A stretch of DNA of 64,000 nt, from contig NW_026927146.1 of NCBI RefSeq assembly GCF_032062105.1, forward strand, positions 62,001 through 126,000. The letters run 5' to 3'. The notes beneath the pieces were generated by a model. That model worked only from the letters and a program-made list of their open reading frames with translations, was not told the DNA's origin and did not search any database. This stretch comes from Saccostrea cucullata (Eukaryota). Shown here piece after piece: positions 43,288 through 49,566 of this stretch (position 1 is its first letter; each line of letters starts with the position of its first letter). The position numbers and the translations under genes are program-made.

Positions 43288-44370
43288 AGATTTTATCTTT
43301 AAAGCCCAACAGTTAGATACTACGCCAGGCAAAATAAAATATCTTTAGAATTTGACTTTTCAAGTTCATATAATCAGTAGTTCTTATCCTATGTATTAAA
43401 TTATATGACACAATTCAAAATATTCTAAACTTCAATATTTGTCATCATAAATCGTACTGCAAATATCAATTAAAATATTATACATGTGCATACAATGCAA
43501 ATGAAATGCAAAAAATGAATGTACAACTACCGAAATTTAACACATACATATGTTTACAATTCATTAGGTAGAACATATTTCTTCCAAAAGGGTATTAATT
43601 TCTATAACATCCGTCTTAGTTCATTAAGTTTTTATTCAACCAGGTAGGTTTTTCAATCTAAAACAAGTCCTTAGATACGATTCAAAATGTTGAATTTATA
43701 ACCACTTTCGATCCAGTTTTTAAAATAAACTGAGAATTTATGAGACCATATCATATATCTAATTGTATTTAAAATACATTATTTTAGATATAAAATTTCA
43801 ACATATAAATAGGGACAAAGGTTAATCATCCATTAAAAACTACTGGCACACACAGTACAATGGATACTTTTGTAAAAGAAAGAGCAATGTTGATTTCTTT
43901 TCATATTTAAAGCCCAAACAGTTAGACATTTCGCGAGACAAAATAAAGATTTGGATGAAAAGTTGTTTAAATCCATGATACGTATGGAGATGATGAACAG
44001 TTTTCAAGATCAAAAGTCCATAAAACAATACAAAGTCGGAGCAGAGTAAACACGGACGTCTAAAACATTGGAGGTAGGGTCAGGTCCCATGGATGAGTGC
44101 GCATTTCCTGTAGACCAATCTGTAAATCTTAGTTCTTACCCTCTAAATATTGAAAGAAAGTGCATATGCCATGCTTGAAAACATTTAAAACTTTAACTTT
44201 TCATCATGAATTATTTAACAAATATCAATTAAAATCTTAGATATACAATGCAAATAGTATAAATATATGTTACTACTTAAATTTTACACATATCTAAAAT
44301 CATAATATAGAACACGTTTTCTACAGACAGGTATAAGAAATCTGTCTCATCTGTCTTATTTTTATTGTTT
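43288..44370 (+). repeat. Old local tandem duplication, second copy interrupted by a retro-repeat fragment
   Basis: tttaaagccca(a)acagttaga...caaaataaa occurs at ~43298 and ~43906. aaatatcaattaaaat...tacaatgcaaat occurs at ~43461 and ~44220. Confidence 0.55.
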
Positions 44371-45984
44371 TATCAACATTGTATAAACATTATCAACCAT
44401 TATCTGTAAACACATACAATGTTATTTGAGGAGTTGTCATACATTTAAGCTTTTTCTTTCATTTGTTTGATCTTTTGTGATAAGTATTATCGATTTTACA
44501 GAATATTTCTTGGAATCATTGATTTAAGCACGTGATTTAATCAAGAATATATATGAAAATATATATATATATGAGTTCTGAATGATGTTTTGAGTTGATT
44601 TTCTCAAAGCTTGCAGTCACGATATTTTTTCTAAATTAAATTTCAATAAAAGTCGAATCATGACTTTACAATATTAGTGTTTTGAACAATTGAAATTTGA
44701 TAATTTCAAAATTTATTCCATGTCTCATGACTGCCGAGATACATCGAGCGCATTTTGGTTACGAGAAAAGAAATAAAAAATAAATGTATGTCAAATTAAA
44801 AAAAACCACGTTGTAAGATGAAATAGCTTATTCTAATTAATTTACAGTAGTATTCGTTGAAATGCAAAACAACTGTTTTAAAAGGCAATCTGTTAATCTA
44901 CTGTAGATTCATTATGTTATTGCCAGTACTTATTACCGCAAATGGGCTCTTCAGCGTCAAGTCGAGAGAATAATAACTCGCGAAATGACGTTTGATCAAG
45001 AGATTTTACATAGATTTCACCACTAAAATCTTAGAATAAAGGCGAATAATTTTATTTTTGCGTGTGGTGTTTCTCGGGAATTAACGCAATCATTAATTCC
45101 ACGGGTATATGTTTAGAAATTTAGCATTTTAATTTATGGTAGAAAAAGAACTTTAAAACTGATAATGACAAAGTCTACCATTATGATTCCTCACGTTAAT
45201 CCATTTTTAATTAAACTTCAATCTGAAGACTTCATATTTCAACGGAACTGTCTAAGGAAGAGGAGGCTATTGATTTAATTAGAGATAGGTAAGTACAAAA
45301 CAAATGTGATAAGTTCGCACATTCCTTTATTTTTTGTCGCACCCTTTTAATTCGATAGTTCTTGGGTAGGTGTTATACTCTTTAGCCATAATATATAAGC
45401 TGCCAAAAGAAGGAAAATCATACAAGTTCATGCACCATCACAAAACAACAGGGGAGGAGGTAAGAATGGTTCTGATATATAATAATAATAATACAAAATA
45501 AATCTATTGAAAAGTTTATTTAAAAAATACGTATACCTGAAATCACAATTAACTCTGCAAATATTATGCAACAAAAATAATTCATAGATTTAGCGCATAT
45601 TTAAGAAAATCATGTCTTCTGGTATTGAAAGGTACTTCTTTTCTAAAGCAATTCTTATAACGTAATATATCTGAAGCATATTTTAATAAATAAATTTTTG
45701 ATTTGTTATAAATTTTACTTTTGAGTCCAAAATATACACGGTCTAGGATTTAGGTAAAATTGCTTCCTTTTACTTTGAAAAAGTAAATTTATATTAAAAA
45801 TAAAACTCGCAAAATTCGCAAATTATTTTCGCTACTGTATATAAAGGAGTACTAGTAAACTCGCAAGTTTAATTAACTTCTTAAGAAAACTCAGGTGCAA
45901 GTACGATGATTTCGTTTTTGTTTGTAAAAAGATAATAAAATATTATATTTAATTTGTCAATTTTTAGTTTCAGGAGACATTAAA

Positions 45985-47582
45985 ATGCAATGGATTACGA
46001 AATTGATCCTGTGTTCCATCACTTTCAACACAATTGCCCATGCACTAATAATTGTACCGCTTATCAACTCTGATTTTGGTAAGACTACGTTCGTCAAATT
46101 GTCATGCACTTTTTAAGACAATTGCAATTAATTTTTTTCTTAGACATATTTGGTTAATTTGAGTAATATTTTCTTATACTGGGATATTTCGACAATTTTT
46201 TTGCATCTGATTGCTGATCTGTTTTTCTTACAGCTTGTGCATGTAACAACAATTTTTAAAAAAATATATATATACGTGTAGCTGTTGAACTAAATTGATC
46301 ATAACAATAGATAAAAAATTACGTAACAACATTATGGCTGAATATTTCTTTTTGTACGTTGAGCTCTATTATATAAATGCTTGCTAATGCTTTCAAGCAC
46401 ATAATCATGTTCATAATTTTTTTTTATATGCCACGTCCAAATGTATAGTTTTTACATGCAAAACATTTTATAATATCATTTTTGCCGCCATTCCAAATTT
46501 CGGGAAAAAAAGATCAACCTTTTGTTGAGTTGTCTGGAATGTATTTTCAATGTCACAGAATACTTTCTTTGTTCAAAATAAGAAAGAGTGATAAAGTGCC
46601 TTATTATAGTACTCTGAATCTTATGTTTTAATTGTAGGGGTTTGAAAATATAAAACCTCTTTGGGTTTCAATATATAAAAATAAATTTCAATTCCAAATT
46701 TGTTCCAAAGTAATTTTCCTATAAAGCAGAATTAAGAAATTCATGCATTTTTTTTTTTATTAGATTCTGTCATTCATTTTAACCAGAAATTTTGTCCATA
46801 TATTTAGCCATATTGTTAGTTTTTTTATAAGTAGAATATCAATACTTGCAAAAAATCAATACAAAATTAAATTAAGACAAACAGCAGGAGAATTAATTAA
46901 ATTATTAATGCGGATTAATGAAATAAATTTTTATTTAATAAACAAAGAAGGAATCCAGCTTTTGATTATACACAAAATAATATTTTCATATTTTTTAAGG
47001 AAGAAAAATCAAACCAATCGTCACTCATTTCCAAAATTATAACCGACTCCTGTAAATACAAGTCAATCAAATTTTATAATGACCAATGACTTTTCATTCA
47101 CATTTACTATATAAATGTAACAATCATTGACCCTCACGCTAAATCTTATTCACACAAATCTGTTATAGAAAGGAGGCGCAAGAATTAATCAACAGTATCA
47201 GATAACACATAAATCAAAAATGTGTGAAACGGAAAAATATTATAATAAAGGATCGGTAAAAATTACCTGGAGTCAAAGGATTATAAAGATTTTTGCCGGG
47301 TGATCAAAAAAAAAAATTCCTTGATTATCGATAAGAAATATAAAAAATTGAAACGGAATCGTAACTGATTATGGATATGATTCCTGCCAAAACAGAATAT
47401 TTATATTCAGTCTCTTTCTAGGGTACGAAAACGACAGCATCATGGATAGAAGATACTCTAAAAGATCGGGAATGGTAATTGAATGTCCTAAAGGTCTTGG
47501 TAAGATGGAATGCTATCAACAACTGATGAACGTGTGGATGAGATTTTTAATGAAGAAACAACAGAAAAGAATAATGTATTAA
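45985..47582 (+). CDS. Small secreted prepropeptide, 84 aa, two coding exons (unrecognised family)
   Basis: Exon 45985-46078 (donor G|gtaaga) and exon 47422-47582 (acceptor tctttctag) join in phase 1 to give MQWITKLILCSITFNTIAHALIIVPLINSDFGYENDSIMDRRYSKRSGMVIECPKGLGKMECYQQLMNVWMRFLMKKQQKRIMY*. There is an acceptor just upstream of the ATG (45973), an upstream donor gtaagt at 45289 and AATAAA at ~47677. Confidence 0.72.
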
Positions 47583-49566
47583 GATAATTGAAAATGATAT
47601 AGAAATTCCACCTGCATTGTTTTGTATATAAAGTTTATATCATATGTAAAAAAAAAATATATTTTTATTGTAATGAAATAAAGAAAATGATCAATCACAT
47701 TTTGTTTGGTTTCATATACGAGTTTATTTCAATGATTATAATCAACGAGGGATGCAGAATCATGCAACTCAGATCAACTTCAAGGAATTTATTTCAGATG
47801 TTGAATTGTTGGTCATACAATTAATCAAATGTTTGGAGTGGCATTTATTTATATTTATTCTTCAGAAGGTATGTGACAAAGAAGAGGTGAACTTTGCCAA
47901 AAAGGACAATTACATGTAATTAATATGTTCTTCCGTACCGTTGATTAATGCAATTTCAGTATTTTTAAAATTTTACGATGGCACCATTCAACCACTGGGA
48001 AGAATAATTTTGATTTAATGATCTTGGGAGAAATGTGAGCTTTAACTTATTTTTGTTAGGTTGTCATGGTTGTGGTTAACATTTTTATTGTGAGGTTGTG
48101 GAAATTGGACCTTGTGGTTGAAAAAAAGACTTTTACTGAATCACTCTTTAAAATTCTGGCAATTAGCAGAGCACAAAATATCTTTATCATCCTCCCAATT
48201 TTTCATACTGATTACAAAGAGTTTTACGGCAAAAACCTTATTCTTTTTGTTTTTGAAGGTATAGACAACATCAACAAATTTCATATTTTTTCAAACAAGA
48301 TTTATGTAAAAGAATAAATGTTTTACCATCTTTGAAATAATATAATATATTATAGCAATACATCTCTAAAGTTAGGTTTGCTGCTGCTCTACTTTTAACC
48401 CCTTAACAGTCTACATTCTTAAAACTTGCTTGATTCATAGTAAACACTATTGTTATGCACTCAAATCTGAATATAATCTTGATATAAAATCTTCTTTGTT
48501 AAGGAGAATATAAAAACTGACTTGTTTTTCTGTCAAATAGTAATGTGTGTAACAATTGTTGCCATGACATACCCTTTTAAATAAATTATTGAAATAAAGT
48601 ACACAAATATCAGTTAAATGCTTAGTGAACTTGTTGGAAATAAAAAAAATTCCAACTACAATTCTGTAATGTGTAATAAGGTTACATGGTGAACATAATT
48701 GATCATAGCTTTTAACAACAAGCATTAATGGTCATTTTAGTACTTCTTTTTCAAAAAGAAAATATATAACGTCTCTGCAAAAAATAAAATTGGGCTACAT
48801 AATCATTGCAACTTAACGAGTCAATACAGTCAATATACATGTATTGGTATCAATGATTTGTTGAATGTTGATAAATGAAATTAAAATCCTATTTATTGAT
48901 TTGTTTTATATGACAAAGCAATCAATGGCTTTTTCTCGGGCAACACTGATTGTGAAAGCCTCTTTAGAAATAATTTCCCTCAACTCTACGTAAAGTCATA
49001 CTTCATCACCCAGGGTTGGCGGGGGTGGGGGTCTTACCATTACCATTATTACCCTGCACTTGTCGATATTTTCATATTGTCATTTTTTTTTGTTCAGATC
49101 AGAATAATTTGACAGAAATTTGGTATGTAAACCTCAATCTGATGAACTTCAAGTTTTGTTTTGGTTGTATCAGCTGTCACATTATTGATTTTCATTTTTT
49201 TTTCCACTGACTCATCACTTCACGGGAGAGGATAATGAATTGTGCATGTGGCGTCATAGAGCGATAATTCAGTGAACAACTCTGAGGGGAATGGACTAAT
49301 TAAAACAGGTAAATTCTCAAAATTACTTAAAGAATATATAAATGTTATTATATAAATTTTGCATGTACATGTACATGTAGTTTAGTGTAACACTGACAAT
49401 TTTCATACGAAGAAAACCGTTTTGCAAATTAATGTGTTGATTTGTTTTCTTTCCTACGTCATACAAAGGGTAAATAATCATATGCAAGGTGAAATGTTTT
49501 TGTCATGATGAATCAGGAAAAAAATAAATCTAATAGTTAAAAAAAAATCACTTATTCCTTTTACAG

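What the first reader, a model, noticed from the sequence alone, without database searches (positions are those of the whole stretch)
45985..47582. Hidden two-exon gene for an 84-aa prepropeptide releasing a cationic, Met-rich, single-disulfide peptide
Seen: two sub-60-aa exons, absent from the ORF track, splice in phase into an intact ORF. It has a hydrophobic N-terminus (likely cleavage near AHA|L), a short acidic pro-region, the basic cluster RRYSKR, then a 38-aa peptide SGMVIECPKGLGKMECYQQLMNVWMRFLMKKQQKRIMY. That peptide has C-X8-C, 6 Met, net charge about +5 and a second KR near the end. An upstream non-coding exon donor and a poly(A) signal flank the ORF. Established: signal peptide + acidic propiece + dibasic convertase site is the layout of both neuropeptide precursors and host-defence peptides. 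Inference: this is a loop-plus-amphipathic-helix peptide hormone or antimicrobial peptide. I cannot match it to any named molluscan family.
Basis: partly seen in the sequence, partly recalled or inferred. Interest (0 to 1): 0.78.

Follow-up and report, generated by a model that had tools for sequence, protein, structure and literature searches.

The report
Unannotated conserved Cys-loop peptide precursor gene
The two small exons form a real gene, kept by selection in at least three bivalve-like lineages, for a secreted precursor that most likely releases a 33-residue disulfide-loop-plus-helix signalling peptide of a family found in no database or survey searched.

Summary
Observation confirmed. 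Exon 45985-46078 and exon 47422-47582 join GT/AG in phase 1 into 84 codons plus stop.

The layout alone is not beyond chance: about 1.4 equally good models are expected per 64 kb.

Comparative evidence shows the gene is real:
- An exhaustive protein search with exon 2 found two unnamed relatives on other organisms' contigs.
- DNA similarity between the loci is confined to the peptide-coding part of exon 2.
- There, synonymous sites are saturated (pS 0.63-1.0) while pN is 0.07-0.19, and changes pile up at third codon positions.
- Both relatives have the same architecture: acceptor just before the ATG, a 31-34 residue signal-like exon with Cys10 and Ala near position 20, a phase-1 intron in a Gly codon, then KR, C-P-x7-C, Y-Q-x-L-x-NVWMRFLM, KR.

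The own genome holds a paralogue type at four loci. Distant multi-copy precursors carry up to about 20 KR-separated units with the same C-x8-C core.

Cationic charge and Met-richness are not conserved, which favours a hormone or neuropeptide over an antimicrobial peptide.

Pfam, PDB and five neuropeptidome surveys hold no match.

Expression, processing and function are untested: no RNA run was listed.

The scan did not record this family before on other DNA.

The parts
45840..45845 (+). TATAAA, a possible TATA box about 140 nt upstream of the ATG (uncertain)
   Evidence: Read. Such hexamers are frequent in DNA of 28% GC, and no conservation was shown.
45870..45894 (+). Possible end of a non-coding 5' exon with donor CAG|GTGCAAGT at 45894/45895 (uncertain; start not determined)
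   Evidence: Read. It is supported only indirectly, by the conserved acceptor before the ATG.
45974..46078 (+). First coding exon: acceptor TTTCAG|, 11 nt of leader, then ATG at 45985. It encodes 31 codons plus 1 nt. The signal-peptide-like part is 45985-46044, with predicted cleavage after Ala20. The donor is G|GTAAGA.
   Evidence: It is homologous to the exon 1 of L030 and L032: Met1, Cys10, Ala20, Pro25, the same phase-1 donor, and the same acceptor before the ATG.
46079..47421 (+). Phase-1 intron (1343 nt, GT..AG) splitting a Gly codon. GC is 0.265, against 0.35-0.37 in the exons.
   Evidence: The intron has the same phase and position in L030 (90 nt) and L032 (1735 nt). It is not alignable between lineages.
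47422..47582 (+). Second coding exon, stop included: propiece, KR, Cys-loop peptide, KR, short tail, TAA.
   Evidence: It is the only part of 5.5 kb alignable to the relatives. Selection in the 29-codon core is purifying.
47460..47465 (+). First conserved Lys-Arg processing site
   Evidence: KR lies at the same distance before the loop in all three lineages, although the MAFFT alignment offsets it by one column.
47466..47564 (+). Predicted mature peptide of 33 aa. Loop Cys codons lie at 47484-47486 and 47511-47513 (C-P-x7-C). The conserved helix Y-Q-Q-L-M-N-V-W-M-R-F-L-M follows.
   Evidence: AlphaFold2 on alignment A4 gives a helix at exon-2 residues 27-50, with pLDDT 81-86 in the core.
47565..47570 (+). 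Second conserved Lys-Arg site. The tail 47571-47579 (3 aa) is not conserved.
   Evidence: K and R are invariant in alignments A1 and A6, while the tails differ in length and sequence.
47677..47682 (+). AATAAA poly(A) signal candidate, 95 nt after the stop
   Evidence: Read. It is frequent by chance in this composition. L032 has AATAAA about 70 nt after its stop.

Best explanation
This is a real, unannotated gene with two coding exons and probably one non-coding 5' exon. It encodes an 84-residue secreted prohormone-type precursor.

Inferred mechanism:
1. The N-terminal 20 or so residues act as a signal peptide.
2. In the secretory pathway a subtilisin-like prohormone convertase cuts after the two conserved Lys-Arg pairs.
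3. A carboxypeptidase trims the basic residues.
4. A 33-residue peptide is released, in which Cys7 and Cys16 close a 10-residue loop (C-P-x7-C) that leads into a conserved, moderately amphipathic helix (Y-Q-x-L-x-N-V-W-M-R-F-L-M).
5. The peptide most likely acts as an extracellular signal (neuropeptide or peptide hormone) on an unknown receptor.

Shown here: the ORF, the splice signals, purifying selection on the peptide-coding part, and conservation of gene architecture, both KR sites and the loop.

Inferred: secretion, cleavage, the disulfide, and the signalling role.

My probabilities are about 0.9 that it is a real selected coding gene for a secreted peptide precursor, and about 0.6 for the full statement including the signalling role.
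For: Relatives. The exhaustive search with exon 2 gave P0001 (E 1.5e-8, 60% identity) and P0002 (E 1e-7, 65% identity), plus three multi-copy proteins.

Conservation pattern. DNA similarity between the window locus (44001-49500) and the relatives' contigs is limited to 47478-47571 (74-83% identity, E down to 1e-14). Introns and flanks do not align.

Selection, on the 29-codon core:
- pS/pN is 0.63/0.19, 0.89/0.17 and 1.03/0.07 for the three pairs.
- omega is about 0.16 where dS can be computed.
- Differences by codon position are 6/4/13, 7/4/15 and 4/0/18.

Architecture:
- L030 has ATG, a 103-nt exon, a phase-1 donor G|GTAAGA, a 90-nt intron, and an acceptor followed by the homologous peptide exon.
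- In L032 the only upstream ATG-initiated phase-1 donor closes a strongly hydrophobic 31-34 aa exon.
- The three exon-1 peptides share Met1, Cys10, Ala20 and Pro25.
- All three loci have a TTTCAG acceptor 11-14 nt before the ATG.

Processing sites. Both KR sites are invariant, while the propiece and the C-terminal tail diverge.

Family:
- A paralogue with the same core and the same phase-1 Gly boundary lies at four loci of the own genome.
- Multi-copy relatives carry 3 to about 20 KR-separated C-x8-C units.
- One of them has the same phase-1 Gly exon boundary.

Other support:
- Composition: exon GC is 0.35-0.37 against 0.265 in the intron, and GC3 is 0.435.
- The synonymous-codon score is -2 to +0.3. 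Chance ORFs give -8 to -14, and real genes give -0.5 to -6.5.
- Structure: a helix at exon-2 residues 27-50.

Signalling rather than defence:
- Net charge is +1 in the orthologues and the paralogue.
- The gene is single-copy and under strong purifying selection.
- The nearest ESM-Atlas feature neighbours of P0007 are small neuropeptide precursors, at sub-threshold scores of 0.76-0.82. This is a lead only.
Against: - No transcript evidence. No RNA run was listed for the locus.
- No spliced product of any family member is in the 5.8-billion-protein collection. All relatives' contigs are unspliced DNA.
- In the L030 species the first loop Cys is Tyr in an allele seen in at least 3 runs, so the disulfide is not indispensable there, or a defective allele segregates.
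- There is no Gly amidation signal, and no similarity to any Pfam hormone family.
- The signal peptide was judged by hydrophobicity, the -3/-1 rule and conservation only. No dedicated predictor was run.
- The window's h-region is only moderately hydrophobic.
- The link to the P0005-type repeats is modest when tested with a P0005-only profile: 4.6-10.8 bits, p about 0.01 to 3e-4.
- The organisms of all relatives are unknown.
Confidence: 0.6

Rival explanations
1. The gene is a host-defence (antimicrobial) peptide precursor. The released loop-plus-helix peptide would disrupt microbial membranes.
For: - The window peptide is cationic (+3) with a helix of moderate hydrophobic moment, 0.42.
- A signal peptide, propiece and dibasic cleavage also occur in defence peptide precursors (established knowledge).
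- Earlier notes report several candidate defence peptide families in this genome.
Against: - Charge is not conserved: +1 in both orthologues and in the paralogue.
- Amphipathicity is reached by 9% of shuffles.
- The gene is single-copy with strong purifying selection and invariant residues on the helix. Bivalve defence peptides typically form fast-evolving multigene families (established knowledge).
- No assembled transcript is on record, whereas abundant effector transcripts are usually assembled.
- The distant relatives are multi-copy KR-separated polyproteins, a neuropeptide hallmark.
Confidence: 0.12
2. The gene encodes a secreted peptide with another extracellular role. Examples are a pheromone or gamete-signalling peptide, a toxin-like peptide, or a sorting or chaperone-like propeptide. 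It would not be a neuropeptide or hormone.
For: The secreted-precursor architecture and the conservation do not say which cells make it or what it binds. The lack of transcripts in general assemblies would also fit expression limited to a stage or tissue, such as gonad or larva.
Against: There is no positive evidence for any of these roles. The two conserved KR sites bracketing a conserved peptide, and the multi-copy relatives, fit classical prohormone processing best.
Confidence: 0.15
3. Exon 2 is an old coding sequence, but in this genome the locus is no longer a working gene. It would be an unexpressed relic whose ORF is still intact.
For: No RNA evidence. GC and the codon signal are weak in absolute terms. 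The window lineage has the most diverged peptide: pN is 0.17-0.19 to the others, against 0.07 between them.
Against: - ATG, both splice sites, both KR sites, both Cys, the invariant NVWMRFLM and the stop are all intact.
- This holds at saturated synonymous divergence.
- Third-position bias also holds for the pairs that include the window.
Confidence: 0.07
4. It is a chance ORF: AT-rich non-coding DNA that happens to give two joinable open frames.
For: Comparable two-exon models are common: 13 distinct ends in this window, and 1.38 per simulated window. Hydrophobic N-termini, K/R pairs, TATAAA and AATAAA are all frequent at 28% GC.
Against: Relatives at E 1e-7 to 1e-8 against 1.8 billion proteins. 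Similarity is confined to the exon, with saturated synonymous and few non-synonymous changes. Exon 1, intron phase and the acceptor are conserved.
Confidence: 0.02

Closest known systems
Classical prohormone / neuropeptide precursors processed at dibasic sites (general class, e.g. molluscan and annelid proneuropeptides)
   Same: Signal peptide, spacer, Lys-Arg sites bracketing the conserved peptide, and divergent spacers. Distant relatives have many KR-separated copies.
   Different: The peptide sequence matches no Pfam family. It matches none of the precursor lists in five molluscan or spiralian surveys searched by motif. There is no amidation signal.
Calcitonin / DH31-type peptides (disulfide loop followed by an amphipathic helix; class-B GPCR ligands)
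   Same: The design principle is the same: an N-terminal disulfide loop leading into a helix. DH31 was among the sub-threshold ESM-Atlas neighbours.
   Different: By my recollection those families have a loop of C-x5/6-C at the very N-terminus and a C-terminal amide. Here the loop is C-x8-C after 6 residues, and no Gly precedes the KR. There is no Pfam hit. This is a resemblance of design only.
Melanin-concentrating hormone and elevenin (single-copy peptides that I recall as having about eight residues between two Cys)
   Same: One disulfide loop of similar size in a small precursor with dibasic processing.
   Different: No sequence similarity was detected and there is no Pfam Pro-MCH hit. In those families the conserved residues lie inside the loop. 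Here they lie mainly in the helix after the loop. The comparison rests on memory and is a lead, not a test.
Unnamed multi-copy Cys-loop polyproteins P0003, P0004/P0008 and P0005 (metagenome contigs)
   Same: C-P-x7-C followed by an aromatic residue and a hydrophobic heptad-like pattern, with KR flanks. P0008 has the same phase-1 Gly exon boundary. P0003 matches at E 1.3e-7.
   Different: They carry 3 to about 20 units per precursor instead of one. The helix consensus differs (F-D-R-Y-I..K-L in P0005). The organisms are unknown, with GC of 0.40-0.49. Similarity to a P0005-only profile is modest.

Membership tests
Dibasic-processed secreted prohormone (generic class) | N-terminal signal peptide | tested here: inconclusive
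   The hydrophobic N-terminus is conserved in three lineages, with a small residue (Ala) near position 20. No dedicated signal-peptide predictor was available.
Dibasic-processed secreted prohormone (generic class) | Conserved peptide bracketed by conserved dibasic sites, with divergent spacers | tested here: met
   Both KR sites are invariant. The core has pN of 0.07-0.19 at saturated pS. The propiece and tail are not conserved.
Dibasic-processed secreted prohormone (generic class) | Expression in neurosecretory or endocrine cells, and a detectable processed peptide | not testable with these tools
   No RNA run was listed and no peptidomic data are at hand.
Calcitonin/CGRP/DH31 | Pfam Calc_CGRP_IAPP or DH31-like profile match | tested here: not met
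   No Pfam family matched at E up to 10 for exon 2, nor at E up to 1 for P0007.
Calcitonin/CGRP/DH31 | C-terminal amidation signal (Gly before the basic site) | tested here: not met
   The sequence before the second KR is K-Q-Q or K-Q-N in all lineages, with no Gly.
Pro-MCH | Pfam Pro-MCH profile match | tested here: not met
   No Pfam hit.
Known bivalve antimicrobial peptide families (defensins, big defensins, mytilins, myticins; multi-disulfide) | Multi-cysteine array (6-8 Cys) in the mature peptide, or a matching Pfam profile | tested here: not met
   The predicted peptide has only two Cys and no Pfam hit. The Cys counts for those families come from my own knowledge.
Cationic amphipathic antimicrobial peptides (functional class) | Conserved net positive charge and marked amphipathicity | tested here: not met
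   Net charge is +3 in the window but +1 in L030, L032 and the paralogue. muH is 0.39-0.45, reached by 9% of shuffles.
New Cys-loop family defined here (window gene, P0001/6, P0002/7, own-genome paralogue, P0003-5/8) | C-P-x7-C followed by [FY]-x-x-[YLM] and a Trp or hydrophobic residue 7 positions after the second Cys | tested here: met
   Cys, Pro, Cys and Trp are invariant in alignment A5. The units are listed.
New Cys-loop family defined here | Peptide exon preceded by a phase-1 intron that splits a Gly codon | tested here: met
   Seen in the window, L030 and L032, the paralogue and L036. The donor side was seen only for the first three.

The most novel reading that the evidence does not exclude
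The gene is the single-copy representative of an old, so far undescribed family of disulfide-loop neuropeptides. The family would share the core C-P-x7-C-[FY]..W and a phase-1 Gly intron, exist as single-copy and as highly multi-copy precursors in different marine invertebrate lineages, and act through a still unknown receptor.
Probability: 0.4. Interest if true: 0.62.

Novelty: new member of a known kind. Interest (0 to 1): 0.5.

Why it matters
Small secreted-peptide genes with tiny exons are routinely missed by annotation. This one is under clear purifying selection, yet it is absent from protein databases, from Pfam and from the molluscan and spiralian neuropeptide catalogues searched.

If the peptide is a signal, it adds an orphan ligand family to bivalve neuroendocrinology, which matters for reproduction, growth and settlement in aquaculture species. 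Its clear motif could be used to mine other genomes, and the peptide can be synthesised for receptor deorphanisation.

Tried and rejected
- RNA evidence: the look-up of sequencing runs (kind rna) listed no run.
- Word-indexed protein search with exon 2 alone: nothing.
- Exact look-ups of both exon ORFs and of the neighbouring 1591-aa ORF: not on record.
- Pfam on both exons and on five relatives: no real hit.
- My first reading of the four weak own-genome hits as a stop-ridden repeat was wrong. I had translated them out of frame, and they are a true paralogue.
- No exon 1 for that paralogue was found within 8 kb.
- No P0005-like multi-copy gene in the own genome (best E 0.27).
- Profile searches of the protein collection added no new member.
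- Metagenome contig scan: the first profile was too diverse. The second found no relative.
- ESM Atlas: P0005 gave no usable hit, and P0007 gave sub-threshold leads only.
- PDB sequence search: chance hits to lipoxygenase.
- Literature: the run accessions occur in no paper. Motif words occur in no relevant main text, and in no supplement of PMC5996578, PMC4200219, PMC8398477, PMC6425005 or PMC8557429.
- No shared neighbouring gene between the window and the relatives' short contigs.
- The donor-like G|GTAAGA inside exon 2 (47499/47500) is not conserved in the relatives, so I rejected it as a splice site.
- Joined step: following the operators' rule, the joined 84-aa product was sent to no search, fold or look-up tool, and all searches were exon by exon by reference. 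The join was used only inside local scripts, for phase, composition and codon statistics. So no search or fold of the whole precursor was done.
- I did not verify the organism.

Full report
**1. Observation**

The sequence at the given coordinates is as described.
- ATG lies at 45985.
- The first open frame can be left at a strong donor (..TTTTG|GTAAGA, 46078/46079).
- A good acceptor (pyrimidine tract, ..CTTTCTAG|GG, 47421/47422) re-enters the frame.
- The frame runs to TAA at 47580-47582.
- That makes 94 + 161 = 255 nt, or 84 codons plus stop, with a phase-1 intron inside a Gly codon.
- AATAAA lies at 47677-47682, TATAAA at 45840-45845, and a donor-like CAG|GT at 45894/45895.
- Acceptor AGs lie at 45967 and 45973.

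**2. Is the pattern beyond chance?**

By itself it is not.
- In this window I counted about 700 ATG-exon/GT..AG/terminal-exon models of 80 aa or more. Of these, 18 (13 distinct ends) have an N-terminus at least as hydrophobic as the candidate's.
- In 60 Markov-simulated windows, 1.38 models per 64 kb matched the candidate's splice scores, length and hydrophobicity. With GC3 or the codon score added, the figure was 0.05 or 0.02.
- The exons are GC-richer than the intron and flanks (0.37 and 0.35 against 0.265 and 0.28), and GC3 is 0.435.
- I built a synonymous-codon model from 20 actin and HSP70 ORFs of the same genome plus the window's 1591-aa ORF. The candidate scores -2 to +0.3.
- For comparison, chance open frames score -8 to -14 (SD 5-9) and real genes under cross-validation score -0.5 to -6.5. 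That is a likelihood ratio of only 2-3 in favour of coding.
- Across a scan of many windows, this level of evidence would be matched by many chance ORFs.

**3. Comparative evidence**

The locus is single-copy at the DNA level in its 1.17-Gb assembly.

Pfam and the word-indexed protein search found nothing, so I ran the exhaustive search with exon 2 given by reference. It returned five proteins:
- P0001 (104 aa, E 1.5e-8, 60% identity);
- P0002 (117 aa, E 1e-7, 65% identity);
- three longer proteins that carry the motif several times.

None carries a name.

The contigs show that P0001/P0006 and P0002/P0007 are prokaryote-style ORF calls on unspliced eukaryotic DNA.

- L030 carries P0007, which was read on contigs from at least eight runs. 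It has ATG, a 103-nt exon, a donor ..TACG|GTAAGA in phase 1, a 90-nt in-frame intron, an acceptor ..CTTCTAG|GA, and then propiece, KR, loop, helix, KR.
- In L032 (P0006) the homologous exon 2 follows ..TTTCTAG|GA. Upstream of it, the only ATG-initiated phase-1 G|GTRA donor closes a strongly hydrophobic 31-34 aa exon.
- The three exon-1 peptides share Met1, Cys10, Ala20 and Pro25.
- All three loci have a TTTCAG acceptor 11-14 nt before the ATG.

**4. Selection**

- blastn of window 44001-49500 against L027, L030, L033 and L032 aligns only 47478-47571 (74-83% identity, E down to 1e-14). There is also a weak match at the acceptor (47397-47430, E 0.02). Introns and flanks are not alignable.
- tblastx of 37001-58000 finds only exon 2, and the proposed frame scores best.
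- I ran Nei-Gojobori counts on the 29 codons from the first Cys to the second KR. They give pS/pN of 0.63/0.19 (window-L030), 0.89/0.17 (window-L032) and 1.03/0.07 (L030-L032).
- Differences by codon position are 6/4/13, 7/4/15 and 4/0/18.
- Neutral sites are therefore saturated while the protein is kept. The frame is translated and under purifying selection. I take the gene as real, at about 0.9.

**5. What is conserved**

Invariant in the three lineages:
- the first KR;
- the loop residues C-P-x-G-L-x4-C;
- Y-Q-x-L-x-N-V-W-M-R-F-L-M;
- K-Q-x-K-R.

The propiece and the tail after the second KR differ in sequence and length.

AlphaFold2 on alignment A4 predicts a helix for exon-2 residues 27-50. 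That runs from the end of the loop through the conserved segment. Mean pLDDT is 69.6, and 81-86 in the core.

Net charge is +3 in the window but +1 in L030, L032 and the paralogue. Met count runs 5/4/2/2. The hydrophobic moment is 0.39-0.45, a value reached by 9% of shuffles. So 'cationic' and 'Met-rich' are local traits, probably helped by the AT-rich composition.

**6. Family**

I first dismissed four weak hits in the own genome after translating them out of frame. That was an error.

In frame they encode a paralogue with the same core (E-C-P-x7-C-Y-Q-H-L-M-x-x-W-x-R-x-F). It follows an acceptor ..TTTTAG|GT, which is again phase 1 in a Gly codon.
- Its peptide exon is identical at four loci whose flanks are about 88% identical.
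- It lies directly behind a 72-bp tandem array, of about 12 copies, that repeats its own acceptor and first codons.
- I found no exon 1 for it.

With the broader profile A5, the own genome holds only the window gene and these four loci.

The distant relatives are polyproteins.
- P0003 has 3 units and P0004/P0008 has 5.
- P0005 has about 20 units of C-x8-C, mostly C-x-P-G-x5-C-F-D-[RKQ]-Y-[IV], separated by KR.
- A profile built from P0005 units alone scores P0003 at 46.8 bits and P0004 at 53.8 bits. The single-copy peptides score only 4.6-10.8 bits, an empirical p of about 0.01 to 3e-4.
- P0003 bridges the two groups: E 1.3e-7 to the window peptide, with 13 of 23 core positions identical in its first unit.
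- On L036 the peptide exon of P0008 also starts after ..TTTTGTAG|GT, a phase-1 Gly codon.

I regard common ancestry of the single-copy and multi-copy forms as likely but not proven.

**7. Function**

The design is that of a prohormone: a signal-like N-terminus, a spacer, a conserved peptide bracketed by conserved KR sites, and KR-separated multi-copy relatives.

Four points favour a signalling peptide over a defence peptide:
- strong purifying selection;
- single-copy status;
- the non-conserved charge;
- the absence of any assembled transcript in public protein collections.

The sub-threshold ESM-Atlas neighbours of P0007 are mostly small neuropeptide precursors. I treat that as a lead only.

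Points against a firm claim:
- no expression data;
- no amidation signal;
- no receptor;
- a Cys-to-Tyr allele at the first loop Cys in the L030 species. It occurs on contigs 99.4-99.5% identical to the Cys form, in at least three runs.

**8. Comparison with what is known**

- No Pfam family matched.
- No solved structure is related by sequence.
- No paper prints the motifs in its main text.
- The supplementary sequence files of five surveys hold neither motif subtype. The surveys cover scallop, pearl and Pacific oyster, oyster visceral ganglia, pan-molluscan, and nemertean/brachiopod/phoronid.
- These motif checks rely on exact 5-letter words, so they would miss diverged orthologues.
- The loop-plus-helix design recalls calcitonin/DH31-type ligands, and the loop size recalls MCH or elevenin. 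However, the defining features I could test (profile match, amidation signal) are not met.

I file it as a new member (a new sequence family) of the known kind 'dibasic-processed secreted peptide precursor'.

**9. Limits**

- Earlier notes of this scan call the genome an oyster. I did not test that, though the expanded actin and HSP70 families fit a bivalve.
- The organisms of all relatives are unknown.
- The joined 84-aa product was sent to no search, fold or look-up tool. It was used only in local scripts for phase, composition and codon statistics.

Noticed in passing
G000 C416:1157243-1158236 (L045 7243-8236); also C107:5560-5703, C3529:8303-8446, C10818:31991-32134: The paralogue's peptide exon (same Cys-loop core) is identical in protein at four loci whose flanks are about 88% identical. 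It sits directly behind a 72-bp tandem array of about 12 copies, which repeats the exon's own acceptor and first codons (G-M-V-K-R-L..). No exon 1 was found within 8 kb. It is unclear whether these are working genes, haplotigs or a mobile or duplicated segment.
   Followed up: partly
L033-L035 versus L027-L031 (Logan contigs of one species), codon after ..ACC ATT GAG: The first loop cysteine is polymorphic (TGT Cys / TAT Tyr) within one species. The contigs are otherwise 99.4-100% identical.
   Followed up: partly
P0005 (773 aa, ENA ERZ27279858 contig of 3056 nt); P0003 on L038; P0008 on L036/L037: These are unnamed polyproteins with 3 to about 20 KR-separated C-x8-C units (consensus C-P-P-G-E-D-x3-C-F-D-R-Y-I). 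They look like undescribed multi-copy neuropeptide precursors of unknown marine organisms, found on metagenome contigs.
   Followed up: partly
window 47499-47505: A consensus donor-like G|GTAAGA lies inside exon 2. It is not conserved in L030 or L032, so it is probably not used.
   Followed up: yes
Its GC3 is only 0.33, and its exact product is not in the public collection.
   Followed up: no
G000 genome-wide: There are at least 57 actin-domain and 34 HSP70-domain matches, many of them intact intronless-looking copies in tandem (e.g. C12628, C5179, C17281, C8140). These are lineage expansions of the kind known from bivalves.
   Followed up: no
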